Positions 5,680-42,469 of a stretch of DNA of 64,000 bases are shown here, one piece after another. A program made the position numbers and the translations under genes. Positions within the stretch are counted from its first letter, which is position 1. Every line of letters begins with the position of its first letter. The notes beneath the pieces were generated by a model. That model did not search any database. It was not told where the DNA came from and was given only the letters and a program-made list of their open reading frames with translations. The stretch covers positions 341,017 through 405,016 of IMG/VR virus record IMGVR_UViG_3300027899_000001. One strand, 5' to 3'.

Positions 5680-5765
5680 ATTGTTATTTGTTTATTATAA
5701 TGCTAATATATAAAAAATATGAATACGATGTGATTTTTTGTTGTTAATTTTTTGTTAAAAAAGCA

Positions 5766-5789
5766 AAAGGGAGAATTTCTTCTCCCTTT
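5766..5789 (-). terminator. Intrinsic terminator after Ro60 gene
   Basis: aaagggaga-N6-tctcccttt hairpin followed by a U-rich tail on the minus strand. Confidence 0.75.
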
Positions 5790-5797
5790 CTATTCTA

Positions 5798-7501
5798 TTA
5801 GATTTCAATCTTGTTGATTTCATCTATGATTACCTGTGGGTTTATTTCAACCTGAGGAATCTTTTCGTAGATGTCTTGACCGTAGCCGTAAAGACGGAAT
5901 ACTCTGTTTCCACCCTTTATAGGAGCAGTTGCTGCATATCCGCATACGTTGATGATGTATACGTATGGTGTTCCGAACTTCTTGCAGTATCCTGCATAAG
6001 AATTTTCTACATTGCTGTATCCATCCTGTTCGTCAGAGATGATAAGAATTCTATCGTACTGCTTGTTAGTTCTTTCAAACAACTTGAAGCAAGAACCGAA
6101 ATCTGTACCGTGACCGCAACATCCGTTGTAGGACATGAACTTCTGCTTTAACGTATTGATTGAATCGATTGGGTTCCAACCTACAATCTGTTCAGCAGTA
6201 GAAGCGAAATGGTATACATCTCCACCAACACCCTTTGCAAATGTTGCAGCTACAAGTGCAGCCTTGTCAGCTGGCTTCTTATTGATAGCCTTCTTAGGGT
6301 CACCATTAAGATAAATGCTGGAGTATCCACCTTTCATAGAACCTGATGTATCGAATACAACTGCTGTTCTACCTTCTGGAAGCAAGTTCTGAAGGTTTGG
6401 AATTGACAATTCATATGCTGTTGAAAGTGCCTTTGCAACCTTAGCCAACTGTGTTCCGTTGAATTCAAGTGTCATCACTTCAAGAGCAATGTCAATCTGG
6501 TGTGGCCATACAAGAGACTTACGGATGAATTCCTTTTCAACAAGTAAATCGCACGCCTTGTCAAGAAGAACAGTATCATTGGTCTTAAGAATGTTACGTA
6601 CGTTACGAAGTAATGCAAGGTACCCAATCTTCTTAGTTTCAATAAGTTCCTTGTAGTTTTCAGTCTTAGCTTCATTAAGTTCAACAGTTGCCTGTTCCTT
6701 AGTGATAGTTCCAGCCTTAACCTTTTCAGCTACAACCTTTCCTGCTTCAGTATTCTTATCTTCAACAGTGTTGAACTGCTTAAGAACGCCAAGAACAAGA
6801 GCCTTAAGAGTTGGAAGACCAACATTACCATTTTCAGGTGCATCTAAAAGATATTCATCCTTTTCGAACTTAGTACCCTTAACAGCCTTCAAGTATTCAG
6901 CTTCTGATACAAATACTGTTCCATTTATAGGTGTTTCATGTGGGTGCACTAAGTTAACGATGTCAACAAGGCTTACACCACGTGACTTCATCTGGTACTT
7001 AGCTAACTGATATGCATCTGCATGTTCAATTGCATCCTTGAATCCCTTCTTAATAGCGTTTGGAATTGGTGCTTCTACACCATTCTTAGCCTGGTAACAT
7101 GCAAGAATTTCTGCCATGTCATCAAGACGATAAACGATACCTCCACGATTTTCCTTACGGTCTCTCTTAGAGAAGAATCTCTTAGCGATTTCAGAACCTG
7201 CAAGGTGAGGGATTAATTCTACTGCACCGTAATGAGTAACAGAACGCTGTCCAAATACTGTACGTGCATAGATAAGTGCCTTAGCTGCGAATAATGCATT
7301 CTTCTGCGCAACTCTATTGATAACTTCACGGAATCTCTTTTCACGTTCAGTTTCCTTTTCGTAATAAGTATTATCTAAACCAGTAGATAAAATACCAATT
7401 AATTCATGTTCTGGCTTCTGTGTTAAACCAGTTCCACCCTGTAAAGTTACAGTTTCCTTAACTTCTGGGTTGCTTACTCTCTTTTCATTGTACTTTGACA
7501 T
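5798..7501 (-). CDS. rsr: Ro60-related TROVE + vWA RNA-binding protein
   Basis: TROVE features (YARTVFGQRSV, YQLAKY, LVDIVNLVHP, GYLALLRNVRNI) and vWA MIDAS DTSGSM, GTD, IISDEQ. Confidence 0.92.
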   Translation of the reverse strand: MSKYNEKRVSNPEVKETVTLQGGTGLTQKPEHELIGILSTGLDNTYYEKETEREKRFREVINRVAQKNALFAAKALIYARTVFGQRSVTHYGAVELIPHLAGSEIAKRFFSKRDRKENRGGIVYRLDDMAEILACYQAKNGVEAPIPNAIKKGFKDAIEHADAYQLAKYQMKSRGVSLVDIVNLVHPHETPINGTVFVSEAEYLKAVKGTKFEKDEYLLDAPENGNVGLPTLKALVLGVLKQFNTVEDKNTEAGKVVAEKVKAGTITKEQATVELNEAKTENYKELIETKKIGYLALLRNVRNILKTNDTVLLDKACDLLVEKEFIRKSLVWPHQIDIALEVMTLEFNGTQLAKVAKALSTAYELSIPNLQNLLPEGRTAVVFDTSGSMKGGYSSIYLNGDPKKAINKKPADKAALVAATFAKGVGGDVYHFASTAEQIVGWNPIDSINTLKQKFMSYNGCCGHGTDFGSCFKLFERTNKQYDRILIISDEQDGYSNVENSYAGYCKKFGTPYVYIINVCGYAATAPIKGGNRVFRLYGYGQDIYEKIPQVEINPQVIIDEINKIEI

Positions 7502-7545
7502 AGTGTACCTCCTTTTTTTACTATTAGTTTATACTAAAGAATTAA

Positions 7546-7776
7546 TTAACATATTACTATAAAATGTTTTCTGTTTTCATTATCTTCACACTTAACAGGC
7601 ATGAATCTTTTATCTTCATAATCTTCTCTTGCAACTTGCATCCAACCATTTTCGGTTCCTGCTGGATTGTCTCTATTTGCTACCTCAAGTATTTCTTCAT
7701 CAGTAGCGTCCCATTCTGCGCAAACTTGCATATAACATATGCCTATCATCGGCTGTGAAACTATTACTCTTTCCAT
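7546..7776 (-). CDS. Hypothetical protein, co-transcribed upstream of Ro60
   Basis: 76-aa ORF with MQVC...NPAGTENGW...C...H...C pattern. Confidence 0.7.
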   Translation of the reverse strand: MERVIVSQPMIGICYMQVCAEWDATDEEILEVANRDNPAGTENGWMQVAREDYEDKRFMPVKCEDNENRKHFIVIC

Positions 7777-7795
7777 ATTAAATTTTATTAAAAAT

Positions 7796-7834
7796 AAAAA
7801 AGCCTGAGTAATTTTTTACGATTTCTCAGGCTTT
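7796..7834 (-). terminator. Intrinsic terminator in the leader of the Ro60 operon
   Basis: AAAGCCUGAG...CUCAGGCUUU 10-bp stem followed by UUUAUUUUU on the minus strand. Confidence 0.8.
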
Positions 7835-7955: not shown

Positions 7956-8098
7956 CAATTATATTATTATATATAAAGTCAAAAACTCTTTGTTTTTAGA
8001 CTTAGTGTTAAAATTTTGTTAAAGATTTATTTATTAAAATTATAGTGTAAATATAATAAAAATTCTTGACAGAAAAAACTTTTTATGTTAAAATTTTG

Positions 8099-8692
8099 TT
8101 AAAATAATGAAATATTTTTGGTACGATGTAATAATCCATATATTATAAATGCATGACCCATCTTTTTATTTGGATCTGTAATAACATCCATAAGAGATTT
8201 ATTCATCTTAACATGATTGTATCCATCAAAATCTATCAAATAAATATCTCGTTTTTCAGTTTTATATAATTCTAAAAGTTGCTTATATGCTTCGCTTTGT
8301 AATAAAGCTCTTTTATAAATAGGAATGTAAATTTTAATTCTTGCTTGAATATATGATAATTTTTCTCCATCCCAATAACTATATAAAGGTTTTGCATCTC
8401 TACCCATAGGATATCTGTGAGCAAAATTATCATTCCATATTTTTTCAGCCCATTCAAAATATGCTGGAGAAGGATCGCCTTTTTCATCTACAAATTCTTT
8501 ATATACCTTTGATGCTTGCCAGGCGTTTTCTACATTCTTTGCATAATATCCTTTATACAAATGCCCGCCCGGAAGAACAAAAGGAGATAAACCTTGAGTC
8601 CAATTTCCTGAACCTGCTCTTGAAGTTGTATTAATTACTACTGCGCCCTCAGGTATCTCATACCTTTTAGCGTATGATTCTACGTATAACAT
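8099..8692 (-). CDS. Conserved hypothetical protein (DUF6939-like, possibly NADAR-related)
   Basis: TTSR...LSPF...NVENAWQASKVY...YIQARIKIYIPIY...GHA pattern; family assignment from memory. Confidence 0.55.
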   Translation of the reverse strand: MLYVESYAKRYEIPEGAVVINTTSRAGSGNWTQGLSPFVLPGGHLYKGYYAKNVENAWQASKVYKEFVDEKGDPSPAYFEWAEKIWNDNFAHRYPMGRDAKPLYSYWDGEKLSYIQARIKIYIPIYKRALLQSEAYKQLLELYKTEKRDIYLIDFDGYNHVKMNKSLMDVITDPNKKMGHAFIIYGLLHRTKNISLF

Positions 8693-8883
8693 AGTGTAAA
8701 TATAATAAAAAATTCTGAATTGAAAATATTTATGTGTTAAAATTTTGTTAAAATGATGAAACTAAACTTTATAGTTAATATATAAATTATATAACCTTGT
8801 ACTTGGGGGTTTAGTGTTTGAAAGAACATTCGAGTTGGAGAAATACCAACGAATAAATTCTCAAATATAAAATAACATAAGGA

Positions 8884-10522: not shown

Positions 10523-10599
10523 TGGTTGTCCCGGCAAGGCTCGAACTTGAAGTCTTCAGAATCAAAATCTGACGTGTTAACCGATTACACCACGGGACA
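10523..10599 (-). tRNA. tRNA-Gln(UUG), CCA encoded
   Basis: Cloverleaf UGUCCCG/CGGGACA, anticodon arm UCAGA-UUUUGAU-UCUGA, T loop UUCGAGC. Confidence 0.9.
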
Positions 10600-11241
10600 A
10601 TTTATAAAATCTAATAATTTTTCTATTGTAAAATATTTCAATTCATAATATGGTATTCTATATATTCTCCATCCTTTAGATCTTAAAAAATTATCTTTTT
10701 TCATATCATGTTCAACCCTTTTTAATCCGTTAGTAAAATGAGGTTCTCCATCATATTCAATAGCAATTTTTTGATCAACAAAAGCAAAATCTATAAAATA
10801 AGGATAAATTGGATATTCATTTATAATTGAATATTTTTCATAAAAACTATTATCTTTAAGCATTTTATTTATTATGCTTTCTCCTTTACTCATCAATCTT
10901 TTATGTCTATTTGTAAAAGTTGAAATATTATTTTCATCAGATAAATAGTCAAAACGTTTTTGTCTTAAAATTTCTTTAGATTGTTCGTTATGATGTTTAT
11001 CCTTGAATGCGTTAGTTATGTTTCCTTCTTTATAATTTTGTTTTAATGTGTTTGATTGTTGTAAAATAGACGCATTATTATGTTTTGTTTTTCCTTTTGC
11101 CCAGTGTATTTTTTCACCAGTTTTCAATGTTTTTCCCGTATCATGTGCTTTACCTTCTTCTGTATGAGTCCTCCAAATATGGCCTTTAATTCCATATTTA
11201 TTATATTCTTTTTCGCAATAAGGACATTTCATACAATACAT
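10585..11241 (-). CDS. Free-standing endonuclease (C2H2 finger + DUF559/Vsr-like domain)
   Basis: CPYC...HIWRTH; YFIDFAF...IAIEYDGEPH...D..L...GWRIYRI. Confidence 0.85.
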   Translation of the reverse strand: MYCMKCPYCEKEYNKYGIKGHIWRTHTEEGKAHDTGKTLKTGEKIHWAKGKTKHNNASILQQSNTLKQNYKEGNITNAFKDKHHNEQSKEILRQKRFDYLSDENNISTFTNRHKRLMSKGESIINKMLKDNSFYEKYSIINEYPIYPYFIDFAFVDQKIAIEYDGEPHFTNGLKRVEHDMKKDNFLRSKGWRIYRIPYYELKYFTIEKLLDFINCPVV

Positions 11242-11247
11242 TTAATT

Positions 11248-11325
11248 TGGTAGCGGGGAAGGGAATCGAACCCCTGTAGTACGGGTTATGAGCCCGAGCT
11301 GGAACCGTCTCCAGTCCACCCCGCG
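11248..11325 (-). tRNA. tRNA-Met(CAU), initiator type, CCA encoded
   Basis: C1:A72 mismatch, GGG/CCC anticodon stem, loop CUCAUAA. Confidence 0.92.
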
Positions 11326-11331
11326 ATATTT

Positions 11332-11538
11332 CTAAAAAGTTTTAATGTCTAGAGGATTGCTTAAATCAAGATGATCCTCTTTAACAATATAAGTTCTTCC
11401 AATCGATTTTTGTGAAAAATAACTCTCAAGTAATTCTCCTAATCTAAGATTTGTGTATTGATTTGGATTACTTTCTTTAGATAAAAGAATTTTCACTGCA
11501 TCTGATCTGTGAATTTCAAAAAAAGTATTTTCTGACAT
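11332..11538 (-). CDS. Hypothetical protein
   Basis: 68-aa ORF after a TATATAA promoter; ends in TAG just before tRNA-Met. Confidence 0.6.
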   Translation of the reverse strand: MSENTFFEIHRSDAVKILLSKESNPNQYTNLRLGELLESYFSQKSIGRTYIVKEDHLDLSNPLDIKTF

Positions 11539-11587
11539 ATTTTTAAGTATTTATATTTTATATATCAAAAATTCTAAAAGTTTTGAG

Positions 11588-11875
11588 TTAATTATAGGTA
11601 ACATTTATCGATTTCATAACCAATTTAGCAAGTTTTTTAGGCTTTTGTTTAGGATAACGTAAATACCATTGCGCACCATTTCTTCCATGAAATGAACCAT
11701 AAATTCCATAAAACATTACTTCTTTTATATAACGATTCATTGAATTATAGGTATAATCGCCGATAACTTTAGTTAAAGGAAATATTTTTCCTTTACGTTT
11801 TTCTGATTTCCAAATCTTAAGAATTTTCTTAATTTTTGTTTTTACTTGCTCCTGTGTATATGTTTTATGTCTCAT
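11588..11875 (-). CDS. Hypothetical basic protein
   Basis: 95-aa ORF. Confidence 0.6.
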   Translation of the reverse strand: MRHKTYTQEQVKTKIKKILKIWKSEKRKGKIFPLTKVIGDYTYNSMNRYIKEVMFYGIYGSFHGRNGAQWYLRYPKQKPKKLAKLVMKSINVTYN

Positions 11876-11885
11876 GATTTTATAA

Positions 11886-12293
11886 TTATTTTCTATCGCC
11901 TTTTAATTTCTGATCTATATCTAAAGGATTTCCAGTATCATGTTGCATACCTTTACCTTGATAAATTGAAAATTCTGCATCTTCACATTGACTAACATAA
12001 CTCATCCAATATCCCCAGTCTGAATATGCATCTGTTTCCCATATTTCAATATCTCCTGCATGAACAGTATAAGTTGTATGCATTCCAATTCCAAGTGTAC
12101 GTTCACCAAGAAAGTCTTCTACTCTATAGTCATAAACATCTACAATTATAGCTCCTGGAAAATCATTGTAAATAGTAATTGTACCTGTATGATTTTCTTC
12201 ACATGGTTCTTTATCTCCACAAGAAAAAATTCCAATAATAGCAATCATAAATAATGATGCTATAAATAATTTAAAAAAGTTTGATCGTTTCAT
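11886..12293 (-). CDS. Putative lipoprotein
   Basis: Signal peptide with lipobox IFSC followed by acidic residues. Confidence 0.7.
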   Translation of the reverse strand: MKRSNFFKLFIASLFMIAIIGIFSCGDKEPCEENHTGTITIYNDFPGAIIVDVYDYRVEDFLGERTLGIGMHTTYTVHAGDIEIWETDAYSDWGYWMSYVSQCEDAEFSIYQGKGMQHDTGNPLDIDQKLKGDRK

Positions 12294-12312
12294 TTGTTAT
12301 CATATTTAATTA

Positions 12313-12813
12313 TTAATAATTTTTGAATAAAGGAATTCCTAATGTTAATTCACCTGTCCATACTCCAGTATATTCATTCCATCCATATCCTATTCCTGCT
12401 TTAAAATATACTCTATTACCGTTATATTTTGAACCTACCATAACTATAGTTACTGGCTCTGTTCCTCCATAACCATAACTATCTTCATATTGATAACCAT
12501 CAGATGCTACACCCACTGATAAATAAAAAGTATAAATATCAGTTGGAGGTCCACTATATAAAGAAGCAGCAAATCCAAAAGAATTTATATTTTCTCCAGT
12601 CATAGGCATTGTAGTTGGCATCCAACCTCCTGTTAGTCCAAATAATCCTGATTGAAAGTCTGCGCCAACCACTCCATCAAGCCAAGAATATCCTCCGTGA
12701 ATACTTAAAGCATATGGTGTATGAGTTGTTAAATCATTTGTTTGTTGCGCATTTAATGTTGATGAAATGAATACAGACATCATCAAGCAAAAAACAAAAA
12801 GAAATTTTTTCAT
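12313..12813 (-). CDS. Putative outer-membrane beta-barrel protein
   Basis: Cleavable signal peptide (..LNA/QQ), alternating Gly/aromatic beta strands, C-terminal LTLGIPLF. Confidence 0.65.
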   Translation of the reverse strand: MKKFLFVFCLMMSVFISSTLNAQQTNDLTTHTPYALSIHGGYSWLDGVVGADFQSGLFGLTGGWMPTTMPMTGENINSFGFAASLYSGPPTDIYTFYLSVGVASDGYQYEDSYGYGGTEPVTIVMVGSKYNGNRVYFKAGIGYGWNEYTGVWTGELTLGIPLFKNY

Positions 12814-12910
12814 GTGTATAAATGTTTAGTTAATAAAAAATTTATATTTATATATATGTTAAAAGTTTTATATTTTGATGTAAACAAAATGATATTTGAT
12901 GTAAAATTTG

Positions 12911-12983
12911 TCCCTCTAGAGAGATTCGAACTCTCGACACGCGGGATTAGAAGCCGCTGGTCTGACCACTGACCTATAGAGGG
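12911..12983 (-). tRNA. tRNA with anticodon CUA (amber suppressor)
   Basis: 73-nt canonical cloverleaf CCCUCUA UA GGUC AGUGGUCA GACC A GCGGC UUCUAAU CCCGC GUGUC GAGAG UUCGAAU CUCUC UAGAGGG A; standard numbering puts CUA at 34-36; C31:C39 mismatch. Confidence 0.8.
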
Positions 12984-13011
12984 TAAAAGAGGGCATTTAA
13001 CCCTCATTGTT

Positions 13012-13338
13012 TTATTCTTTTTTTGTATGAAATTCTATACATTTATTTATTGCGTTTGGATATTGATTAAGAGGGTGATTTTCTTCAGGGTAATGATTTT
13101 CAATCTGTGAGAATTTTTTTCCTCTCATTAATCCATATGCTGCATATTTAATTCTTAATTCTAATCCGCCTACGTAAGATTTCCATGCGGCGTCTTTAGG
13201 TTCTATAATTCTTTCACCTTTTAAATGAACAGTCTTTCTTTGATTTTTCATAGCTCTTTGTAATGCTGCGCTTTGTTTAATATCTTTTTTTAAAGATTCG
13301 ATTGCGACTTTATCGATTGTTTTTTCTATTGTTTCCAT
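13012..13338 (-). CDS. Hypothetical protein in amber module
   Basis: 108 aa, YAAYGLMRGKKFSQIE segment; lies between the amber leader peptide and the CUA tRNA. Confidence 0.8.
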   Translation of the reverse strand: METIEKTIDKVAIESLKKDIKQSAALQRAMKNQRKTVHLKGERIIEPKDAAWKSYVGGLELRIKYAAYGLMRGKKFSQIENHYPEENHPLNQYPNAINKCIEFHTKKE

Positions 13339-13417
13339 AATGATTATTTTATTTTAGTTATTAAATTAATTGATCAAGGACATAATGTCTTTGAGATTGT
13401 CTTCGATAACCTAATCA

Positions 13418-13444
13418 TTAGGGAGATCTAATCTAGTGTGTCAT
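13418..13444 (-). promoter_or_regulatory. Putative leader peptide M-T-H-(TAG)-I-R-S-P-stop
   Basis: ATG ACA CAC TAG ATT AGA TCT CCC TAA TGA with A-rich start context (ttaaaactATG). Confidence 0.55.
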
Positions 13445-13507
13445 AGTTTTAAGTTTTAATTTAGTTTAAATCTAATAAAAATTTTTGATATAATTTTATT
13501 GTATATA

Positions 13508-13858
13508 TTAAAGTTTTGTTAATGTTTCTTCTTTTAAAGCTAATGGTAAATTGGATGTTAATTTATGAGATCTTTCTCCAGGTTCAATAGCGATCGCAGT
13601 TAATTGATTTCCAATATCTGGTTCAAGAAACGTTGTATACTTTAAATCGTAAAATTTAATTTTTTCTAAAAGGTGTTTAAGTTGTTGTTCATTTTCAACA
13701 GATAAGAATATCAAATACTTAGAATTAGTATTCCATTCCTTTGCGATTTCTGGATGTTCATGTTGAAATTCAATTGCAGCATGTGCGGCTTGAACTGCCT
13801 GATAACCCGGAGTTAAATCTCTACGGGTAATAACAATTAATTTGTGTATCTATTTCAT
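13508..13858 (-). CDS. pth2: Peptidyl-tRNA hydrolase type 2-like protein with in-frame TAG at codon 3
   Basis: MK*IHKLIVITRRDLTPGYQAVQAAHAAIEF...W...LIFLSVENEQQL...FLEPDIGNQLTAIAIEP...SNLPLA; the ORF track caught only the last 68 aa. Confidence 0.8.
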
Positions 13859-13859
13859 T

Positions 13860-13937
13860 TTATTTACTATTTTTTTTATAACTTACATAAAGTATAAGTA
13901 ATACTACTATTGATATAATTATGATAATTGTTCCCAT
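13860..13937 (-). CDS. 25-aa single-pass membrane peptide
   Basis: MGTIIIIISIVVLLILYVSYKKNSK; stop 1 nt before the pth2 ATG. Confidence 0.45.
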   Translation of the reverse strand: MGTIIIIISIVVLLILYVSYKKNSK

Positions 13938-13951
13938 ATTTTATTATATAT

Positions 13952-14065
13952 TTAAATTGAAAAAAGTTTCATAATTAATATAACTAACATAATTCCTATC
14001 ATACTCCAAAAAACTACTTTATAGGAATAAGATTTGTCTCTATTGTAATAATCTTCACTTTTCAT
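13952..14065 (-). CDS. 37-aa membrane peptide
   Basis: MKSEDYYNRDKSYSYKVVFWSMIGIMLVILIMKLFSI; ATGA overlap with upstream gene. Confidence 0.5.
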   Translation of the reverse strand: MKSEDYYNRDKSYSYKVVFWSMIGIMLVILIMKLFSI

Positions 14066-14379
14066 TTGTATTCTTCTCCAGATATATCTACTAGTGCTTT
14101 AGGAATAAAAATTTCATCTTGTCCTTCATACCATTCATTTGGCCAATTATCAATATCTAATATTGGTCTTTTAAATGCTTTTTTAATTTCTTTTCTAACC
14201 CATTTTAAATCTTTAATAGAAGTATGTTCAACCATTAAACTCTTATCTGAATAACTTGTTGGAACATCGTTTTTATCATAATAAACTTCTGATATGGAAA
14301 AATATCTTTCTTTTCCTTTTGCATATCTTCCAGTTATTACTCTAAAATTCCAATGATGTTGAGGTTTATATTTTTTCAT
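14062..14379 (-). CDS. Hypothetical phage protein
   Basis: WNFRV...FSISEVYYD...KAFKRPIL pattern. Confidence 0.7.
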   Translation of the reverse strand: MKKYKPQHHWNFRVITGRYAKGKERYFSISEVYYDKNDVPTSYSDKSLMVEHTSIKDLKWVRKEIKKAFKRPILDIDNWPNEWYEGQDEIFIPKALVDISGEEYK

Positions 14380-14402
14380 GATGTTGAGGTTTATATTTTT
14401 TC
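14353..14402. repeat. 25-bp perfect tandem duplication
   Basis: atgatgttgaggtttatattttttc x2, spanning the start of the 14062..14379 gene. Confidence 0.9.
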
Positions 14403-14403
14403 A

Positions 14404-14580
14404 TTAAAAATCATCTTCTAAATAATATACAAAATCATAAATATCTGCTACCATAGTTTCTTGTAAACATACATCGCAAGTATCTTCCCAAAATGATGCT
14501 ACACCTGCTAAAGTTTTGCCTTGTTTTTTAGCGCACTTTTCGCAAATTTGGACAATCATTTTTCTATCATTCTTTGACAT
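14404..14580 (-). CDS. Small Cys-rich hypothetical protein
   Basis: CEKC...CDVC; start reassigned to MSKNDRK. Confidence 0.55.
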   Translation of the reverse strand: MSKNDRKMIVQICEKCAKKQGKTLAGVASFWEDTCDVCLQETMVADIYDFVYYLEDDF

Positions 14581-14851
14581 CTTCTTCCTTTTTGACATCT
14601 TCTTCTTTTTTAGTATTTTCAATTATTTTTGGTCCTCTTCCTGTCATAACACCAAGAACTATTACCGCAACGATATCTAAAAATACTGTTAATCCTTGTA
14701 CATCATTAATTGTACCTCCGGCAGATCCTACACTAAGTCCAATTAAAAAACCCACAAATAATGCAGCGCCTAAAGGAATTAAAGCATACCATCTCCAACC
14801 TTTACGCCAAGCTAAAATAGTTAGAACTATTTGAAGAATAAATAAAATCAT
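14567..14851 (-). CDS. Small membrane protein
   Basis: Three hydrophobic segments, KKEEDV repeated tail. Confidence 0.7.
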   Translation of the reverse strand: MILFILQIVLTILAWRKGWRWYALIPLGAALFVGFLIGLSVGSAGGTINDVQGLTVFLDIVAVIVLGVMTGRGPKIIENTKKEEDVKKEEDVKE

Positions 14852-14884
14852 AATTTTATTTTATTAAATGAATACTAAAAATTG

Positions 14885-14966
14885 TGGCCAAAAAGGGACT
14901 CGAACCCTTACGTCTTTCAACACATGCTTTTGAGGCATACGCGTCTACCAATTTCGCCATCTGGCC
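14885..14966 (-). tRNA. tRNA-Leu(CAA)
   Basis: GGCCAGA/UUUGGCC acceptor, loop CUCAAAA, long variable arm, A73. Confidence 0.9.
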
Positions 14967-15265
14967 AGGCTAGCCTCCGCCGATCTTTCATCAGTTTCTT
15001 TTGTTAAACCTTTTCTCCAATTTCTTTTTCCTACAAATCCGTCTATAGCTGGTTTTCCTTCTCTATGAATTAAACAGTGTAAAAAATGTGAATTTAAACT
15101 TTGATGATTATTGAATTCTTTTTCACATTCGCATCTATATAAATTTTCATTAATTTTATATTTTGATGGTTGTTTTTCTTTTTTAACATAGATTTTACAA
15201 AAAGTTTTATGCCCATTTATTCCTTGAGAACTTTCAAATTCTCTTCCACATTCACACTTATACAT
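14945..15265 (-). pseudogene. Truncated zinc-finger endonuclease remnant
   Basis: Two YKCECG.EF...HC repeats and WRKGLTKETDER, no nuclease domain; frame runs into tRNA-Leu. Confidence 0.6.
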
Positions 15266-15318
15266 TTTTAATTTATATATTCATAAACAAATTTGGGAGA
15301 GTCAATGATTATTCTATG

Positions 15319-15406
15319 TGCTCTTGAAGGGGATCGAACCCTCAATCCTTTTTAAGGCATTAATTTTTGAGACTAACGTGTATTTCCTATTTTCCACCAC
15401 AAGAGC
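15319..15406 (-). tRNA. tRNA-Leu(CAA), second copy
   Basis: GCUCUUG/CAAGAGC acceptor, UUAGU-CUCAAAA-AUUAA, long variable arm. Confidence 0.85.
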
Positions 15407-15421
15407 AAAATTTATTTTTTG

Positions 15422-15495
15422 TACTGCGTGCGGAGCTCGAATCCGCGAATTCAGGATTGAAAGTCCTGTGTGTTAACCAACTTCACCAACGCAGC
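15422..15495 (-). tRNA. tRNA-Glu(UUC)
   Basis: CAGGA-CUUUCAA-UCCUG anticodon arm, full cloverleaf. Confidence 0.88.
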
Positions 15496-15504
15496 ATATT
15501 TAAT

Positions 15505-15615
15505 TTCAGAAATTCTGAGAATCGAGAATCACCGTGAAACTTTTGTCTATCACAAGGATGCCAACCCACCCTTCAACTGTTTTAACGCCGAGTTGGGGTC
15601 GCTTTATCAGTTGCA
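15505..15615 (-). ncRNA. Unidentified structured RNA with pseudoknot potential
   Basis: GC-rich island; CAACUG/CAGUUG stem, loop CCAACUC complementary to downstream GGGUUGG, two further hairpins. Confidence 0.45.
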
Positions 15616-15627
15616 TTTAATAACTTA

Positions 15628-15757: not shown

Positions 15758-15772
15758 ATTTTTTCAAAGAAC

Positions 15773-16003: not shown

Positions 16004-16012
16004 ATTATATTT

Positions 16013-18490: not shown

Positions 18491-18498
18491 ATTTATTG

Positions 18499-26683: not shown

Positions 26684-26772
26684 TTTTCGTTTGTTTTTAA
26701 TTATTAAATGTTATGTAAATATAAACATTATTCTTGATGTGAAATAATAGTTTTTGTTAATGTTATGTTAAT

Positions 26773-29596: not shown

Positions 29597-29706
29597 AGTT
29601 TATTAAGTTTTTATTCTAGAGACAGGATTTCCTAGAGAGTTAAAGGTATTAATTATATGGTAGCTAAGAAAAAAGTTTTGCATTTTTTGTTAAAATTTTG
29701 TTAATG

Positions 29707-32148: not shown

Positions 32149-32323
32149 ATATTTTATATATTCATGAAATTTATACAAGTTTTTACATCTATGTTAAATT
32201 TATGTTAATTTTTTATATTACCAGTTTTCCAAAAATATTTTATATTTTGTCTTTGTTCTATTGTAAGTGTTTTACCCTTCATAAATTTTATAGAATGTTC
32301 AATATCATCTTTAGTTATTTTTG

Positions 32324-32794: not shown

Positions 32795-33242
32795 AATGTA
32801 AATATAATAAAAAATTATGATATTAGAATATAATAGGAGTTAATATTTTGTTAAATTGTAAGATCAATTACTTCTATGTATTCTATTAAAACGCCATGAC
32901 GACTAGTGCCAGAACCAGAACAACTCATAGCATAGTGTACACTTGTTATATTAACTTTAGGATTTTCTTCGATCCATTCATTTATCTCGTTTTCCAACCC
33001 ATCTGATTCGTAATGTTCAAATACTTTTACTTTCATCGTTTTTATGTTTAGTTAATAAATAATCAGAAGTTGAATACATTAAAATCATTGCTCCAACTGC
33101 TAATGTAATTATAGGAACAAAGATTAAATTATGAGGAAATTTATTGTTTCCTATGAAGTATGAAAGTGTTAAAAATAAAAATATTTTTAATTCGCACATC
33201 CAAAAGTATCTCCAATTAATCTTTTGTAAAAACTTTTTCATC

Positions 33243-36454: not shown

Positions 36455-36747
36455 TATTTAAGTATTTTAATTTGTTTTGCTAAAAACCATTTTCCACCTT
36501 GACTTGCGGGTCTATTAAATTCTGTGTAATCTTTCATTTCAACTTGTAACCAGACTCTACCTTTATTGCTTAAATGTGGTGCATCTGGATGCTCTGTACA
36601 ATGCCAAAAAGGACGTACCTTATATCCCTTTGTTGGATAAGATTTTGCATCTAACCATACATTTGCTTGTAATTTTTCACTTTTATTTATGAAAAGAGAT
36701 GTAATTTCTCCTGATTTAAGTTGTCTAAATAACTTATATACTATCAT
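36454..36747 (-). CDS. Conserved hypothetical phage protein
   Basis: YKLFR...LFIN...RPFWHC..PDAPHL...QGGKWFLA. Confidence 0.75.
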   Translation of the reverse strand: MIVYKLFRQLKSGEITSLFINKSEKLQANVWLDAKSYPTKGYKVRPFWHCTEHPDAPHLSNKGRVWLQVEMKDYTEFNRPASQGGKWFLAKQIKILK

Positions 36748-37056
36748 TTCTTTAAATCGTTATCAAGTTTATTTAATATTTCCACTCTTGCATTTTCTAT
36801 TTTATACATAATTAAAGCACCAATAGATCCCATAAAAAAGGAATCAGTTGGATGAATAATAGTAAATATCATTAAAATAATTACTAAAGATAAGTAAAAT
36901 AAACTGTAGTCTTTTGTTTTCATGTTATGTATTTTTATTTTGAAAGTTAAATATAATATAAATTCTTGATAAATAAAAATATTTAATGAATATTTTTTTC
37001 AAAAAATTAAAACAACTTATATTATTTTTTATATAAAATTTATATAATGATTAATC

Positions 37057-37860
37057 ATGAAAGATTTTAGAAAAACAGAAAATGGATTTTTTATTTGTGA
37101 AGAATGTGGGATAATAACTAAAAGAAAATCTGGGTTAAGTAAACATATTAATATTCATCATATTAATGTAAAAACATATTTTGATAAATGGATAAAAGAT
37201 ATCGATGATGATAAATGTAAAATATGTAAAAAAGAAACTAAATATCTTAACATAAAAACTGGATATAAAAATACTTGTTGTAAAAAATGCGAAAATTTAT
37301 ATAAACATAATAGAACAAAAGAAGAGTGTATTAAAAAATATGGAGTAGAACACCCTTTGCAAGATATATCTATAAATGAAAAACAAAAACAATCAATGAT
37401 AAATGTTTGGGGTGTAAGTAATCCTGGCCAATCAAATGAATTAAAATTAAAAAAGAAAAAAACTTTTGTATTAAGATATAAGTGTGAAAATCCTTTACAA
37501 ATTAAAACAATATTTTATAAAACTCAAATATCTGGATATAATTGTAAATTATTCAAAAATACTACTATTTATTATAGAGGCTCATATGAATTAGATTTTT
37601 TAGAAAAATATTATGACATATACCCCGATATTGAAAACGGTCCATCTATTAAATATAAAATCGGTGTAAAAAATAAAATATATTATCCGGACTTTTTTAT
37701 TCCGTCATTAAATCTTATAATTGAATGTAAAAATTCGTATTTAGCTAAAAAAGATAAAAAACTTATAAAGATTAAAGAAAATGCATGTATTGAAAACGGT
37801 TTTAATTATTGTATTATAATAAATAAACAATATGAAAATTTAAGATGGCTCAAGAATTAA
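37057..37860 (+). CDS. Free-standing endonuclease (zinc fingers, KYGV repeats, PD-(D/E)XK)
   Basis: CEEC..HINIHH; KKYGVEHPLQ; RGSYELDF, YYPDFFI...IIECKN. Confidence 0.85.
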   Translation: MKDFRKTENGFFICEECGIITKRKSGLSKHINIHHINVKTYFDKWIKDIDDDKCKICKKETKYLNIKTGYKNTCCKKCENLYKHNRTKEECIKKYGVEHPLQDISINEKQKQSMINVWGVSNPGQSNELKLKKKKTFVLRYKCENPLQIKTIFYKTQISGYNCKLFKNTTIYYRGSYELDFLEKYYDIYPDIENGPSIKYKIGVKNKIYYPDFFIPSLNLIIECKNSYLAKKDKKLIKIKENACIENGFNYCIIINKQYENLRWLKN

Positions 37861-38541
37861 TCCTATTCCTGAAATATTTTTTATATTTAATTTTATTTTA
37901 TTTTCTTTAAATGTCTTTCGTAAATAAGATAAATAAACATCACAAGATCTACCAGCAAAATAATCATTTGGTTTTCTCCAAACTTTTTCAAGTATAACTT
38001 CTTTTCTTACAACTTGTCCGTAATTTATTGCTAATACTTCAAGTATACTACCTTCTTTAGGAGAAAGCTCTTTAACTTCTTTTCCGTTATAAGAAAGAAT
38101 TCTACGAGTTGGATCATAAACACATTTTGCAAATTCAATTTTATCATGCATTTTAACTGTAAGTTTCTGAAGAACTTCAAATGTTTTTGTGTATGAAAGA
38201 ATATTATGTACAACTGATTTGACAAATACATTATATGCAGCATCTCCTTCAAATTTCATGGGTTCATTCACATAAATATCAGCAGGAACAGTAAAAGTTA
38301 ATTCATTTACAATAATTCCTATGATAGGAGTATATGGCGTACTTTTTTTAATAAAACCTACAGCCTTTTTGAAAAATAGAGTATCGTTTGATAAAATATA
38401 AGCTTCTGCACTGCCTTGCTCAATTTGTTCAAATAAAACATGTTCCATTTTTGCCCCAATTATTTCGTGGCCAGATTCTTTTGCGAATCTTATAAACATA
38501 TTTAACAAATCAGTGTTTTCTGTATTCACTACAATTTTCAT
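37840..38541 (-). CDS. OmpR/PhoB-family winged-helix regulator (RprY-like) with degenerate receiver domain
   Basis: LSPKEGSIL..L...G.VV.KE.IL.KVW...DYFAGRSCDVYLSYLRK...KNISGIG; N-terminal domain appears to lack the canonical acidic pocket. Confidence 0.85.
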   Translation of the reverse strand: MKIVVNTENTDLLNMFIRFAKESGHEIIGAKMEHVLFEQIEQGSAEAYILSNDTLFFKKAVGFIKKSTPYTPIIGIIVNELTFTVPADIYVNEPMKFEGDAAYNVFVKSVVHNILSYTKTFEVLQKLTVKMHDKIEFAKCVYDPTRRILSYNGKEVKELSPKEGSILEVLAINYGQVVRKEVILEKVWRKPNDYFAGRSCDVYLSYLRKTFKENKIKLNIKNISGIGLILEPS

Positions 38542-38601
38542 ATGTATTTTGTTAATTTATAATGCAAATATAAACAAAATCTTTGAATTAAAAAAATATT
38601 T

Positions 38602-38641
38602 GTTAAAAATTAATTAAGATTTAATGTTAATGTTTTGTTAA
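38602..38641. promoter_or_regulatory. Double GTTAA-N6-GTTAA direct-repeat box upstream of the regulator gene; representative of 11 sites
   Basis: (G/A)TTAA half-sites at 38602/38613 and 38626/38637, 11-bp period. Confidence 0.6.
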
Positions 38642-40421: not shown

Positions 40422-40468
40422 AATTAAAAAAATTAGTGAATTATAATATATATAATCACTAAAAAATA

Positions 40469-40514
40469 GAAGTTTCCGGCGGGGTAGGTCTATATCATGT
40501 ATGCCGGAAACTTC
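40469..40514 (-). terminator. Strong hairpin, probable terminator
   Basis: gaagtttccggc...gccggaaacttc 12-bp stem, 22-nt loop, followed by UAUUUUUU on the minus strand. Confidence 0.55.
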
Positions 40515-40975
40515 TGAAAAATATTATATTACTTTGAAAAGAAAAAGAGAAAAAGATAATAAACAAATTCCTAATAAAGTTAGATAACCTATTCGTATAG
40601 GTCTTTTGAAATCTGCCCACTCTTTTGATAACTTTTTCATTACAATATAATAGCTTATGCCTACTATTGTTAAGAGTACTACTAAATTTAGTAATTGAGG
40701 CAAAATGCTTCTTAAAAAGTCCATAATTTTAATTATTAAAGTTAGCGAATTTTACGAATAAGAATGTGTTTAGAAAGAACCATATATACGTTACAAGATT
40801 CAGTGATGTTGTAAACATGAAGTTCATTTTTAACTTTATCAATTCCTTTAATTTGTACAAGGTCATTAGCGTGAGTAATATAAACTCCGTCTTTTTTCAA
40901 TTCGTCTACTGGAAGAGATGGGTCTTTAAGTATTGGTTTCATATTGTAAATATTAAATTAAAACTTCAAATTATT

Positions 40976-41059
40976 TGCTCCAATATATAGATTCGAACTA
41001 TAAGCCTTTTCAGGTTCCTGGCCTCTATTTGGGCTCTCATCCAAATGAGTAAAGGAGTA
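40976..41059 (-). ncRNA. Degenerate tRNA-like element
   Basis: D arm CUCA-UUUGGA-UGAG, T arm UAUAG-UUCGAAU-CUAUA, partial acceptor stem, no canonical anticodon loop; has an upstream promoter motif. Confidence 0.5.
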
Positions 41060-41390
41060 TATTTTTAATTTTAAAGAACTGTTGTATTAATTATAGTGTA
41101 AATATAATACAAATATTTGATACAAAAAAATATTTTTCCATTTATTTTAACAAAATCTTAATTATTTTTCTACAGCCATTAAAAGTTCAAGATCTTTAAA
41201 AACTGCTTCTACTATTTTTATTTTATCTTTATAAGCTGAAATATGAGCATCCATTACAGTTGTTAAATAATCTGCGCCTGTTTGTTTTTTAAGTTTTTCT
41301 ATTTCAGCAATAGCATTTTCATATACAGTTATTAAACTTGTATATTTCTCAATGATTCTTTCGTACTCTTCTTTTTGTGTCATGATATTT

Positions 41391-42152
41391 TTATTTTAAT
41401 CGATTAAAAAATAATTCTGGTTTAAGTATTTCTTCTACAGTTGGAGGTTTATTATGAGCTAATATTTGTATTCCTTTTTTGAGCCCATATTTATCTAAAA
41501 AATCTCGTAAAAAATAATAAGAATAAACATATTTATTATTCACTTCATTATTTTTATCTAATAAATCTTCTATAGTTTGAGGAATTTGAATTTTATCTAA
41601 TGGTGAACATTCCTTTAAATGATACACAACATATTCGCACGTACCTTCTTCTATAAAATCTGCACTAAATTGAGAATTATAGGTTGAAACTGTTCTTAAT
41701 ATTTGATATTCTGGAGAAACTGATAAACTATCATTTTTCATCAGTATTGTTAGCTGATGAAAATATACGTGTGTTAATTCATGAAATACAACTGCTTTAA
41801 CACTTCTTTCTCTATATGAAGTTAGCATTTTTCGAAATTTAGATAAATCTTTATATTCATAACAAAGATATTTTTCTCTATTGGTTATAGCTATATCATT
41901 AGGAGGATAAAATTCGCCTAAATTATCTTCAGGAGAATCACCCAAGTCATCGGTATAAAGATTAACATCATATAATGTATCTATTTTATATTCATATTCT
42001 TTAATAAGACTTTCATTATTATCTTCAATATATTTTGTTATTCCATATCTTGAAGGTGCATGAAGATTATTATACATAATATCCTTTTGAAAAGGAGATA
42101 TCATAATAAGCCATAAAATAAAAATACCTACAAGATTATTGATACTATTCAT
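41391..42152 (-). CDS. Putative secreted zinc metallopeptidase
   Basis: N-terminal hydrophobic segment; VFHELTH and FIEEG gluzincin-like motifs. Confidence 0.7.
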   Translation of the reverse strand: MNSINNLVGIFILWLIMISPFQKDIMYNNLHAPSRYGITKYIEDNNESLIKEYEYKIDTLYDVNLYTDDLGDSPEDNLGEFYPPNDIAITNREKYLCYEYKDLSKFRKMLTSYRERSVKAVVFHELTHVYFHQLTILMKNDSLSVSPEYQILRTVSTYNSQFSADFIEEGTCEYVVYHLKECSPLDKIQIPQTIEDLLDKNNEVNNKYVYSYYFLRDFLDKYGLKKGIQILAHNKPPTVEEILKPELFFNRLK

Positions 42153-42469
42153 ATATATTTTTTACAAATATAAACCAAATTCTTGAATAAAAAAAATATT
42201 TTTATATTTATTTTAGTAACTATACCATTTTAATATACGTGTCGCGCGAGGGTTTTTATGATTCAGTCTAGAGTATCTGCATTCCTAGAGGGCTTTAGTC
42301 TTCAGTTATATGCAGTCAGTGAAAATAGTTTCGCACCAAAATTAATGTTCTGTTAAAAATAATTTAAAAATAAATGCATAAATATTTTTTTATTACATTA
42401 ATATTGTTTATATTTGTTCTCAACATAAATATATAAAGTAATGAATGCAATACTAAACAAATAAACAAG

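What the first reader, a model, noticed from the sequence alone, without database searches (positions are those of the whole stretch)
5743..42356. Regulon of 11-bp-period GTTAA direct repeats matching the phage RprY/OmpR-type regulator
Seen: (G/A)TTAA pairs exactly 11 bp apart at 5743/5754, 8007/8018, 8087/8098, 8736/8747, 26756/26767, 29689/29700, 32193/32204, 32839/32850, 38602/38613 plus 38626/38637, 42341/42352, and inverted at 41147/41158. Each lies just upstream of a promoter motif, and the doubled site precedes the regulator gene itself. Established: OmpR/PhoB wHTH domains bind 11-bp-spaced direct repeats. Inference: the phage regulator, whose receiver domain seems to lack the phospho-acceptor Asp, is a phosphorylation-independent activator or a mimic of a host regulator. 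Targets would include the Ro60, flotillin and dCMP deaminase/NAD units.
Basis: partly seen in the sequence, partly recalled or inferred. Interest (0 to 1): 0.65.

Follow-up and report, generated by a model that had tools for sequence, protein, structure and literature searches.

The report
Phage RprY-like regulator and its boxes
A 405-kb freshwater jumbo phage carries about two dozen sharply defined TTAAC-N6-TTAAC boxes at a fixed distance upstream of its promoters, and it encodes a kinase-less response-regulator look-alike, related to the Bacteroidota regulator RprY, that most likely binds them.

Summary
GTTAA-N6-GTTAA (TTAACA-N5-TTAACA on the gene strand) occurs 9 times exactly in the window against 0.46 expected. 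It occurs 26 times in the complete 405-kb phage genome, 21 of them in the 8% that is intergenic (0.28 expected from AT-matched shuffles).

The 3' half-site ends 28-33 nt before a -10/-7-like box in three different promoter types. Box-bearing host-type promoters have a significantly weaker -33 region. Sites are conserved in front of orthologous genes in related phages. The box is the most conserved element upstream of the regulator gene in 12 relatives.

The 233-aa protein folds as a full OmpR/PhoB response regulator. It has Ser at the phospho-acceptor position, there is no kinase in the phage, and it is predicted to form a dimer through its beta5-alpha5 face. Its best family match is RprY.

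Independently, 11 of 14 bacterial rprX-rprY-like operons carry GTTAA-N5/6-GTTAA 27-28 nt upstream of their TAnnTTTG box. This ties the RprY-type recognition helix to this half-site.

Binding itself is untested. The best reading is a phosphorylation-independent, RprY-derived activator with an autoregulated phage regulon. The closest described analogue is H. pylori HP1043.

The parts
37840..38541 (-). Gene for the 233-aa pseudo-receiver plus winged-helix regulator (RprY-like DNA-binding domain)
   Evidence: Pfam Trans_reg_C at residues 157-227. AF2 pLDDT 89.6 with full-length matches to KdpE, PhoP, PmrA and HP1043. Best NCBIfam match is RprY. It is the only Trans_reg_C gene in the genome.
38626..38641 (-). 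Distal exact box (TTAACAAAACATTAAC) of the regulator's own promoter
   Evidence: TTAAC and TTAA are invariant in the alignment of 12 relatives' upstream regions.
38602..38617 (-). Proximal imperfect box (TTAATTAATTTTTAAC), 8 nt after the distal box and 29 nt before the -7 box
   Evidence: The same two-site layout is seen in L002 and L003 and, with degenerate proximal sites, in L005 and L007.
38564..38572 (-). Host-type -7 box TATATTTGC of the regulator promoter (matches TAnnTTTG)
   Evidence: This promoter keeps a good core (20.6 bits).
5743..5758 (-). Exact box. A TATATATTA box lies 30 nt downstream (5704-5712). The unit holds small ORFs and dCMP deaminase (4728-5231).
   Evidence: A terminator-like hairpin lies just upstream of the box.
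8007..8022 (-). Exact box. A TATATAATA box lies 31-33 nt downstream. The unit holds ORF 7546-7776 and the TROVE/Ro60-like gene 5798-7501.
8087..8102 (-). Exact box. A type A box TATATTTAC lies 31 nt downstream (8047-8055), in tandem with the 8007 unit.
8736..8751 (-). Exact box. A type A box lies 31 nt downstream (8696-8704). The ATG of gene 8099-8692 (DUF6939) follows 3 nt after the box.
13507..13522 (-). One-mismatch box (TTAACAAAACTTTAAT) before a TAGATTTAA box and gene 13012-13338
26756..26771 (-). Exact box. A type A box lies 32 nt downstream (26715-26723). The unit holds NfeD-like 26159-26683 and SPFH/flotillin-like 24567-26126.
29689..29704 (-). Exact box before a type C core (GAAAC, then CCATATAA at 29653-29660) and gene 29177-29596
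   Evidence: Orthologues in G002 and G003 also carry a box.
32193..32208 (-). Exact box. A type B box GAATATATAAAAT lies 29 nt downstream. The unit holds ORF 31963-32148 and HNH/NUMOD3 31284-31985.
32839..32854 (-). Exact box. A type A box lies 32 nt downstream (32798-32806). The gene 32324-32794 encodes a HAD-family protein.
41147..41162 (+). One-mismatch box in inverted orientation, 40 nt upstream of a minus-strand type A box (41098-41106)
   Evidence: The same 39-40 nt geometry holds at three further inverted sites elsewhere in the genome; a fourth lies at 37 nt.
42341..42356 (-). One-mismatch box 28 nt upstream of a type C core (CATATAAC at 42305-42312) leading to gene 41391-42152. It also lies 52 nt from the plus-strand type A promoter of the RNaseH-like gene 42470-42991.

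Best explanation
The boxes are binding sites for the phage's own 233-aa protein.

This protein descends from the Bacteroidota RprY branch of OmpR/PhoB response regulators. It has kept the RprY-type recognition helix but lost the phosphorylation site and has no kinase. It probably forms a constitutive dimer through the beta5-alpha5 face of its pseudo-receiver. The two winged helices then sit head to tail on two (T)GTTAA half-sites one helical turn apart.

The gene has a good host-type (TAnnTTTG) promoter plus a doubled box, so it would be made early and feed back on itself.

Bound about 45-60 bp upstream of the start, it would help RNA polymerase at about 20-25 promoters whose own upstream element is weak. 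It would do so whichever sigma reads the core: the host type, the TATATAAAAT late-like type, or the GAAAC/CCATATAA ECF-like type. Its role would resemble that of T4 MotA.

Targets include its own gene, Ro60/TROVE, NfeD-flotillin, dCMP deaminase, HAD, Hsp20, a gp32-like SSB, DNA ligase, a PolB piece and short hairpin-forming transcripts.

What is shown: the motif, its statistics, its geometry, its conservation, the protein's fold, its missing residues, and the RprY-box link in bacteria. What is inferred: binding, activation, timing, and the Bacteroidota host.
For: Motif:
- Strong enrichment and a sharp 11-bp period.
- 21 of 26 sites are intergenic.
- Fixed 28-33 nt distance to the -10/-7-like box in three core types.
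- Type A promoters with a direct box have a weak -33 region: mean 4.9 against 22.7 bits, p = 0.0009.

Conservation:
- TTAAC repeats are the top repeated 5-mer pair in four of five related phages and a close second in the fifth.
- If a G000 gene has a box, its orthologue has one in 9 of 24 cases. If it has none, the figure is 1 of 110.
- An exact box lies within 150 nt upstream of the regulator gene in 12 of 17 relatives. It is the invariant island of that region.

Protein:
- It is the only OmpR-type gene in the genome.
- The fold matches full-length response regulators.
- Ser51 and Glu93 replace the Asp and Lys. No kinase is present.
- Homodimer prediction: score 0.54 against a best control of 0.00. 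That mark was reached by 20 of 30 proteins solved as pairs of one chain and by 1 of 23 solved as single chains. The runs share at least 74% of contacts, and the partner's pLDDT is at least 82. The interface covers residues 77-125, which is beta4 through alpha5.
- The recognition helix GRSMDVY(I/V)T(Y/H)LR is invariant across the family, as is the half-site.

Link to RprY:
- The best NCBIfam match is RprY.
- Bacterial RprY-like proteins share YF..RSMDVY..LRK.
- 11 of 14 bacterial rprXY-like operons carry GTTAA-N5/6-GTTAA 27-28 nt before TAnnTTTG, against 0.044 expected. The same 10/11-bp alternation is seen among the phages.

Architecture matches validated family sites:
- PmrA: CTTAAG and xTTAAT half-sites separated by 5 bp, bound head to tail (PMC3973317).
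- HP1043: TTTAAG-N5-TTTAAG, 11 bp centre to centre, an atypical phosphorylation-independent regulator (PMC5253667).
Against: - No binding, expression or transcript-start data exist. Only one DNA run holds the phage and no RNA run does.
- Half-site and recognition helix never vary, so there is no covariation test.
- Relatives G001 and G002 use mainly a 10-bp variant (TTAACATTTTTTAAC) on almost every promoter of one gene cluster. That looks more like a class-wide promoter element.
- The box occupies the position of an UP element.
- Box orientation in the phage (mostly TTAAC towards the gene, 31-32 nt) differs from that in bacterial rprXY promoters (GTTAA towards the gene, 27-28 nt).
- P. gingivalis RprY is reported as a repressor (PMC6032018).
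- The host's own RprY could be the binder.
- The match to the RprY model covers the DNA-binding domain only: 47.8 bits against a cut-off of 370.
Confidence: 0.7

Rival explanations
1. The boxes are read mainly by the host's own phosphorylated RprY or another host OmpR-type regulator. Phage genes would then be coupled to a host stress signal. The phage protein would be a competitor, a decoy, or a modulator of the host RprY regulon rather than the main activator.
For: Bacterial rprXY-like promoters carry the same half-site and the same 10/11-bp periods. Exact boxes precede three orthologous gene pairs in two Bacteroidota genomes. Known precedent, from my own knowledge: cyanophage pho boxes are read by host PhoB.
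Against: The phage encodes its own protein with the matching helix. A conserved, doubled box sits at that very gene in 12 of 17 relatives. In 301 sampled Bacteroidota genomes, none holds more than 15 exact boxes. In the rows tallied, the counts equal the reversed-pattern control. The host is unknown.
Confidence: 0.15
2. The repeat is a core or UP-like promoter element contacted directly by RNA polymerase, for example by the two alpha C-terminal domains. No dedicated transcription factor is involved.
For: The position is about -44 to -59, with two sub-sites one turn apart and an A/T-rich spacer. The box occurs with three different core types, so it is sigma-independent. In G001 it is present on 13 consecutive promoters of one cluster. 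Box-bearing promoters have weak -33 regions, which an UP element would also compensate.
Against: The motif is discrete, with an invariant C/G in a 29%-GC genome. Exact sites are about 70-fold enriched, while one-mismatch sites are at background genome-wide. It works in both orientations at distinct fixed distances. There is no general enrichment in 301 Bacteroidota genomes. The same repeat sits specifically at the promoters of genes for RprY-type regulators in bacteria and phages.
Confidence: 0.1
3. Another phage DNA-binding protein recognises the boxes, and the association with the winged-helix gene is coincidental. Candidates include one of the C2H2/DUF7487 proteins, a sigma factor, or an unrecognised factor.
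For: Jumbo phages usually encode several transcription factors (PMC7824862). The phage has an ECF-like sigma and an r2-only sigma-like ORF. Most of its roughly 466 ORFs were not scanned.
Against: Direct hexamer repeats at 10-11 bp are the hallmark of OmpR/PhoB head-to-tail dimers (PMC3973317, PMC5253667). The box is too far upstream for sigma region 4. The independent bacterial RprY association would be unexplained.
Confidence: 0.05

Closest known systems
HP1043 (HsrA) of Helicobacter pylori, an atypical orphan OmpR/PhoB regulator
   Same: Both have a degenerate receiver, work without phosphorylation and have no kinase. HP1043 is a dimer in its solved structure; the phage protein is only predicted to be one. 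HP1043 binds two hexamer direct repeats (TTTAAG) with a 5-bp spacer, 11 bp centre to centre, upstream of the -10 box and acts positively. The site at its own promoter is in the opposite orientation (PMC5253667). The phage protein also matches the HP1043 structure 2hqr by fold.
   Different: The phage protein is virus-encoded. Its half-site is TTAAC(A), not TTTAAG. Its boxes lie further upstream and do not replace the -35 region. It serves three core promoter types. Its receiver lacks helix alpha4 in the model. Sequence kinship is to RprY, not to HP1043.
RprY of Bacteroidota (NCBIfam NF051850)
   Same: RprY is the best family match. The two share the recognition helix YF..RSMDVY..LRK. The same GTTAA direct repeat at 10-11 bp sits at the regulator's own promoter. 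Both use TAnnTTTG-type core promoters.
   Different: The score is 47.8 bits against a cut-off of 370, and only the DNA-binding domain aligns. There is no Asp, no Lys, no rprX partner and no Pfam Response_reg signal. The preferred box orientation and distance differ. P. gingivalis RprY is described as a repressor (PMC6032018). No RprY consensus was found in the two RprY papers read, so the bacterial box is my inference.
PmrA box of enterobacteria
   Same: Both have hexamers with a TTAA core separated by 5 bp. The PmrA box is bound head to tail by two winged helices, whose receivers dimerise on alpha4-beta5-alpha5 (PMC3973317, PMC4660055).
   Different: PmrA needs phosphorylation by PmrB. Its flanking bases differ (CTTAAG/xTTAAT). 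It is a cellular regulon.
T4 MotA and middle promoters (from my own knowledge)
   Same: Both are early phage-encoded activators that recognise a short box upstream of a subset of promoters. These include promoters of replication genes: here a gp32-like SSB, a ligase and a PolB piece.
   Different: MotA is a different fold. It binds at -30 and needs AsiA-remodelled sigma70. Here the box is at about -50 and is independent of the sigma type.

Membership tests
OmpR/PhoB-family response regulators | C-terminal winged helix-turn-helix (Pfam Trans_reg_C) | tested here: met
   48.4 bits against a cut-off of 26.2, residues 157-227. PDB sequence matches to ArlR, PhoP, PhoB and KdpE DNA-binding domains.
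OmpR/PhoB-family response regulators | N-terminal CheY-like receiver fold | tested here: met
   The AF2 model (pLDDT 89.6) has strands beta1-beta5 and helices. Full-length Foldseek alignments of about 240 columns match KdpE, PrrA, PhoP, PmrA and HP1043. There is no Pfam Response_reg signal in the phage genome even at E = 10.
OmpR/PhoB-family response regulators | Phospho-acceptor Asp at the end of beta3, plus the acidic pair, Thr/Ser and Lys | tested here: not met
   In the alignment with RprY-like proteins, Ser51 falls at the Asp, Glu93 at the Lys and E8-N9 at the DD pair. Across 36 family members the acceptor column holds S, D, E, Q and other residues.
OmpR/PhoB-family response regulators | Cognate histidine kinase | tested here: not met
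   No HisKA domain in the complete phage genome. The single HATPase_c protein also has Toprim and an intein piece, so it is a topoisomerase. A host kinase cannot be excluded.
OmpR/PhoB-family response regulators | Dimer on the alpha4-beta5-alpha5 face | tested here: inconclusive
   This is a prediction only. Score 0.54 against a best control of 0.00. The mark was reached by 20 of 30 proteins solved as homodimers and 1 of 23 solved as single chains. Interface residues 77-125. Similar solved complexes exist, so the pass may reflect likeness.
OmpR/PhoB-family response regulators | Binds tandem direct repeats about one helical turn apart | not testable with these tools
   Only the DNA side is seen: a sharp 11-bp (10-bp in relatives) direct repeat at promoters.
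RprY (NCBIfam NF051850, equivalog) | Score above the curated cut-off over the full length | tested here: not met
   47.8 bits against 370, residues 132-228 only. The protein is not an RprY equivalog, but RprY is its nearest named family.
RprY (NCBIfam NF051850, equivalog) | RprY-type recognition helix and a GTTAA repeat at its own promoter | tested here: met
   The box is at the phage gene and at 11 of 14 bacterial rprXY-like operons. That this box defines RprY is my inference, not a published criterion.
Atypical phosphorylation-independent OmpR/PhoB regulators (HP1043, ChxR type) | Degenerate receiver, orphan status, activity without phosphorylation | tested here: inconclusive
   The degenerate receiver and orphan status are met. 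Activity without phosphorylation cannot be tested here.
UP element (rival) | A/T-tract consensus at -40 to -60 without invariant G/C, read by alpha-CTD | tested here: not met
   The position fits. The most informative position, however, is an invariant C in each half-site, and sites are all-or-none.

The most novel reading that the evidence does not exclude
A clade of freshwater jumbo phages captured the DNA-binding half of the Bacteroidota stress regulator RprY and fused it to a dead receiver that dimerises on its own. The phages use it as a sigma-agnostic master activator for a conserved phage regulon that includes Ro60, flotillin, replication genes and small hairpin RNAs. Because the host's rprXY promoter and RprY targets carry the same GTTAA box, the same protein would also take over the host RprY regulon during infection. 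As a by-product, this predicts the so far undescribed RprY operator of Bacteroidota: GTTAA-N5/6-GTTAA, 27-28 nt upstream of TAnnTTTG.
Probability: 0.3. Interest if true: 0.75.

Novelty: new variant of a known kind. Interest (0 to 1): 0.62.

Why it matters
Transcription programmes of uncultivated jumbo phages are almost unknown. This locus offers a readable regulatory code: one box, one candidate protein, about 25 targets, conserved over phages only 42-65% identical in that protein.

It can be tested directly with a single purified 233-aa protein.

It would be an example of a virus turning a two-component response regulator into a signal-independent activator.

It also points to the operator of RprY, a widespread Bacteroidota regulator. 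No consensus site was found in the two RprY papers read.

Tried and rejected
- **Cultured relatives.** Megablast of 20 kb against cultured phages found nothing. tblastn of the regulator against cultured phages gave only two weak hits, so no studied relative exists.
- **Close bacterial homologues.** Pattern search gave a best hit of 29% identity in a Bacteroidetes MAG. The kinship with RprY became visible only through NCBIfam and targeted genome searches.
- **RNA evidence.** One freshwater DNA run holds the phage and no RNA run does, so no transcript starts are available.
- **Covariation between recognition helix and half-site.** Neither varies. The 10-bp against 11-bp preference does not track any clear change in the DNA-binding domain.
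- **A second paralogue for the 10-bp variant.** Each of G001-G004 has a single Trans_reg_C gene.
- **Co-occurrence test (boxes without the gene).** Further relatives found through the prohead protease are fragments of 135 kb or less, so absence cannot be judged.
- **Host-wide box scan.** In 301 Bacteroidota genomes there is no general enrichment: 71 matches against 71 control matches in the first 50 rows by my own tally, and at most 15 per genome.
- **Rfam.** Nothing was found on the type C transcripts and only tRNAs in the window.
- **A plus-strand sigma70-like reading.** TTGACA-N17-TAAAAT lies within the 8087 site. I rejected it because it would point antisense into minus-strand genes and is not conserved at other sites.
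- **Site at 34241.** This two-deviation site has no core box at the right distance. I treat it as chance.
- **RprY literature.** No published RprY consensus was found in the two RprY papers read.

Full report
**Where the window lies.** The window is the last 64 kb of a single 405,016-bp virus record. The record has direct terminal repeats, is rated complete, and has 29% G+C. The only public run holding it is a freshwater metagenome, and no RNA run holds it. It has no close relative among cultured phages. Genes in window 1-42 kb run almost all on the minus strand. Structural genes, such as a collagen-like tail fibre and a 2290-aa protein, follow on the plus strand.

**The observation.**
- Exact GTTAA-N6-GTTAA occurs 9 times in the window, all on the plus strand, against 0.46 expected. 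The sites at 38602, 41147 and 42341 have one mismatch.
- In the whole genome, period 11 gives 26 sites, while periods 5-29 otherwise give 0-8.
- The unit is really TTAACA plus an A-rich 5-nt spacer. TTAACA-N5-TTAACA occurs 22 times against 0.3 under an order-3 Markov model. One-mismatch versions are at background genome-wide, so the motif is all-or-none.
- 21 of the 26 sites lie in the 8.2% of the genome that is intergenic.
- Among all 5-mer pairs at non-coding periods, TTAAC ranks first in this genome.

**Anatomy.** Read on the gene strand, the box is TTAAC-N6-TTAAC pointing towards the gene. It sits between the upstream gene's stop, terminator or tRNA and the next start codon. Its 3' end lies at a fixed distance from a -10/-7-like box in three different core promoter types:
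- Type A has a long conserved core ending in TATATTTAC/G. This fits the Bacteroidota TAnnTTTG -7 consensus (the consensus is from my own knowledge). There are 33 candidates in the genome, and the box lies 31-32 nt upstream.
- Type B is GAATATATAAAATAAA. It is the commonest upstream word, found in about 70 of 189 upstream regions, and resembles the T4 late promoter. The box lies 29-30 nt upstream.
- Type C is GAAAC-N14/15-CCATATAA, followed by a short hairpin-forming transcript. The box lies 28 nt upstream.

Five sites are inverted: four lie 39-40 nt upstream of type A cores and one lies at 37 nt. The 39-40 nt distance is about one helical turn beyond the 27-28 nt seen in bacteria. Only about a quarter of type A promoters and a tenth of type B promoters carry a box, so it is an overlay rather than a core element.

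Type A promoters with a direct box match the 30 nt between box and -7 element significantly worse than box-less ones do. The means are 4.9 and 22.7 bits (Mann-Whitney p = 0.0009, n = 6 and 17). This is the usual mark of activator-dependent promoters. The regulator's own promoter keeps a good core (20.6 bits).

**Targets.**
- In the window: the regulator gene itself (doubled box); a TROVE/Ro60-like gene (two tandem boxed promoters); NfeD plus SPFH/flotillin; the dCMP deaminase unit; HAD; DUF6939; the HNH/NUMOD3 unit; two type C units; and several small ORFs.
- Elsewhere in the genome: a gp32-like SSB, an NAD-dependent DNA ligase, a PolB piece, Hsp20, an ankyrin protein, a GT25 glycosyltransferase, the prohead protease gene and a DUF7487 protein.

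**The protein.** Window 37840-38541 (minus strand) encodes 233 aa with a Trans_reg_C domain.
- It is the only such gene in the genome.
- Its family has 88 full-length or partial relatives, all from metagenomes.
- With that alignment, AlphaFold2 gives pLDDT 89.6. The model has five strands of a receiver-like domain (alpha4 missing), a long alpha5 helix (residues 96-128) and the winged helix.
- Foldseek aligns the whole length to KdpE, PrrA, PhoP, CosR, RpaA, PmrA, GlnR, RitR and the atypical HP1043.
- Pfam Response_reg is not detectable.
- Aligned with bacterial RprY-like regulators, Ser51 falls at the phospho-acceptor Asp, Glu93 at the conserved Lys and E8-N9 at the acidic pair. In the family the acceptor column varies (S, D, E, Q and others).
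- The phage has no HisKA domain. Its one HATPase_c protein is a topoisomerase with Toprim and an intein piece.
- A homodimer is predicted. The score is 0.54 against a best control of 0.00. That mark was reached by 20 of 30 proteins solved as pairs of one chain and 1 of 23 solved as single chains. The runs share at least 74% of contacts, and the partner's pLDDT is at least 82. The symmetric interface covers residues 77-125, the beta4-beta5-alpha5 face used by active OmpR/PhoB dimers. This supports but does not show a constitutive dimer.

**Relatives.** Nineteen IMG/VR loci encode the protein at 42-65% identity (100% for a fragment of the same phage).
- An exact box lies within 150 nt upstream of the gene in 12 of 17 of these loci.
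- In an alignment of 12 such upstream regions, the invariant columns are TTAAC, TTAA(C) and the -7 box.
- The two-site layout at this promoter recurs in L002 and L003 and, with degenerate proximal sites, in L005 and L007. It consists of an exact distal box, an 8-nt gap and a degenerate proximal box.
- I fetched four large related records, G001-G004. TTAAC repeats are the top pair in three of them and a close second in G002. Period 11 dominates in G003 and G004, period 10 (TTAACATTTTTTAAC) in G002, and both occur in G001.
- Each has one Trans_reg_C gene.
- The recognition helix GRSMDVY(I/V)T(Y/H)LR is constant.
- Boxes are kept at orthologous genes. If the G000 gene has one, so does the orthologue in 9 of 24 pairs. 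If not, the figure is 1 of 110.
- Type C units carry the 11-bp box in every phage where they were seen, including G001 and G002.

**The link to RprY.** The protein's best NCBIfam match is RprY. The match covers the DNA-binding domain only and scores 47.8 bits against a cut-off of 370. The next best matches are VanR-F/M and Bacteroidota PhoB.
- Bacteroidota genomes encode RprY-like regulators about 40% identical to the phage DNA-binding domain. They share the unusual helix YF..RSMDVY..LRK.
- I located the promoters of 14 bacterial rprX-rprY-like operons from a sample of the phylum. Eleven carry an exact GTTAA-N5/6-GTTAA against 0.044 expected. The repeat always lies 27-28 nt upstream of a TAnnTTTG box, which ends 1-6 nt before the kinase start codon.
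- These eleven fall into about seven distinct sequence contexts. Both 10-bp and 11-bp periods occur, as among the phages.
- The two RprY papers I read give no consensus. P. gingivalis RprY binds the nqrA promoter and is described as a repressor (PMC6032018).
- So the same type of DNA-binding domain is found next to the same direct repeat in two independent sets, phages and bacteria. It also supports a Bacteroidota host, together with the TAnnTTTG cores.

**Comparison with known systems.** The box architecture equals that of validated OmpR/PhoB sites. The PmrA box has CTTAAG and xTTAAT half-sites 5 bp apart, bound head to tail (PMC3973317). The site of HP1043, an atypical, phosphorylation-independent orphan regulator, is TTTAAG-N5-TTTAAG, 11 bp centre to centre, positively acting and inverted at its own promoter (PMC5253667). 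Jumbo phages commonly encode their own HTH or wHTH factors (PMC7824862). I found no described phage pseudo-response regulator with a defined regulon in the literature searches run here.

**Rivals.**
- Host RprY may be the binder. This cannot be excluded and may be true in addition to the phage protein.
- The box may be an UP-like element read by RNA polymerase. The position fits, and the cluster-wide use in G001 fits. The invariant C, the all-or-none nature, the two orientations, the lack of enrichment in 301 Bacteroidota genomes and the specific tie to RprY-type genes argue against it.
- Another phage factor may bind the box. Sigma factors can be set aside because the box lies too far upstream and goes with three core types. 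The phage does encode an ECF-like sigma and an r2-only sigma-like ORF, which plausibly read types C and B.

**Verdict.** In mechanism it is a new variant of a known kind, an atypical OmpR/PhoB regulator with direct-repeat boxes. It is virus-encoded, RprY-derived and apparently sigma-agnostic.

Noticed in passing
window 12910-12983 (-), within the tRNA array at 10523-20112: The array holds 14 tRNA genes. One has anticodon CTA (reads TAG; ARAGORN labels it Pyl), so it is a possible amber suppressor and a hint of stop-codon recoding.
   Followed up: no
window 29600-29704 and 42200-42356; also G000 176161-176300, G001 131807-132100 and 244440-244560, G002 36700-36828, G004 2800-2931 and 83050-83185: A third promoter type, GAAAC-N14/15-(C)CATATAA, is always preceded by an 11-bp TTAAC box 28 nt upstream. 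It is followed by a short hairpin-forming transcript. A 35-nt stretch is duplicated at window ~42265-42305 and G000 ~176213. TGAAAC-N15/16-CATA resembles ECF-sigma promoters. There is no Rfam match.
   Followed up: partly
G000 57428-58060 (-) and 67213-67563 (-), outside the window: The phage encodes an ECF-like sigma factor (Sigma70_r2 + r4_2, 210 aa). It also has a 116-aa ORF with only a weak region-2 match, possibly a gp55-like late sigma.
   Followed up: partly
L136-L151, L129-L135 (Bacteroidota genomes G005-G232): 11 of 14 rprX-rprY-like operons have GTTAA-N5/6-GTTAA 27-28 nt upstream of a TAnnTTTG box, which ends 1-6 nt before the kinase start codon. This is a candidate RprY operator, and the transcripts would be nearly leaderless.
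   Followed up: yes
L138, L143, L144, L146 (RprY-like genes with no ordinary-sized rprX-type kinase gene directly upstream; L138 follows a 988-aa kinase-like ORF): A conserved single element TT(T)AACAAAA(A/T)AT lies about 85-95 nt upstream of the start codon.
   Followed up: no
L103-L122 (genomes G224 and G168): Exact TTAACA-N5-TTAACA boxes precede three orthologous gene pairs in two Bacteroidota genomes. One pair has the phage-like 31-32 nt distance to a TAnnTTTG box. Another G224 box lies upstream of an rpsF-like gene, though not at the phage-like distance.
   Followed up: partly
G001 302251-322379 (-), G002 6124-86527: In the more distant relatives a 10-bp variant (TTAACATTTTTTAAC) precedes nearly every promoter of a terminal gene cluster. 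In G001 there are 13 consecutive units of about 60 conserved nt.
   Followed up: partly
G000 113534-115267 (-): A topoisomerase II-like protein (HATPase_c + Toprim) ends in an intein-splicing fragment.
   Followed up: no
window 37057-37860 (+) and G000 108266-109228 (-): These are DUF7487 proteins. The window copy has an added C2H2 zinc finger and a weak TnsA-like endonuclease match. It converges on the regulator gene and overlaps its 3' end by 21 nt. The other copy is itself preceded by a TTAAC box.
   Followed up: no
window 45674-49561 (+): A 1295-aa tail-fibre protein has seven stretches of collagen triple-helix repeat and an endosialidase-chaperone domain. Its 9-bp coding period dominates naive repeat scans of the genome.
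   Followed up: no
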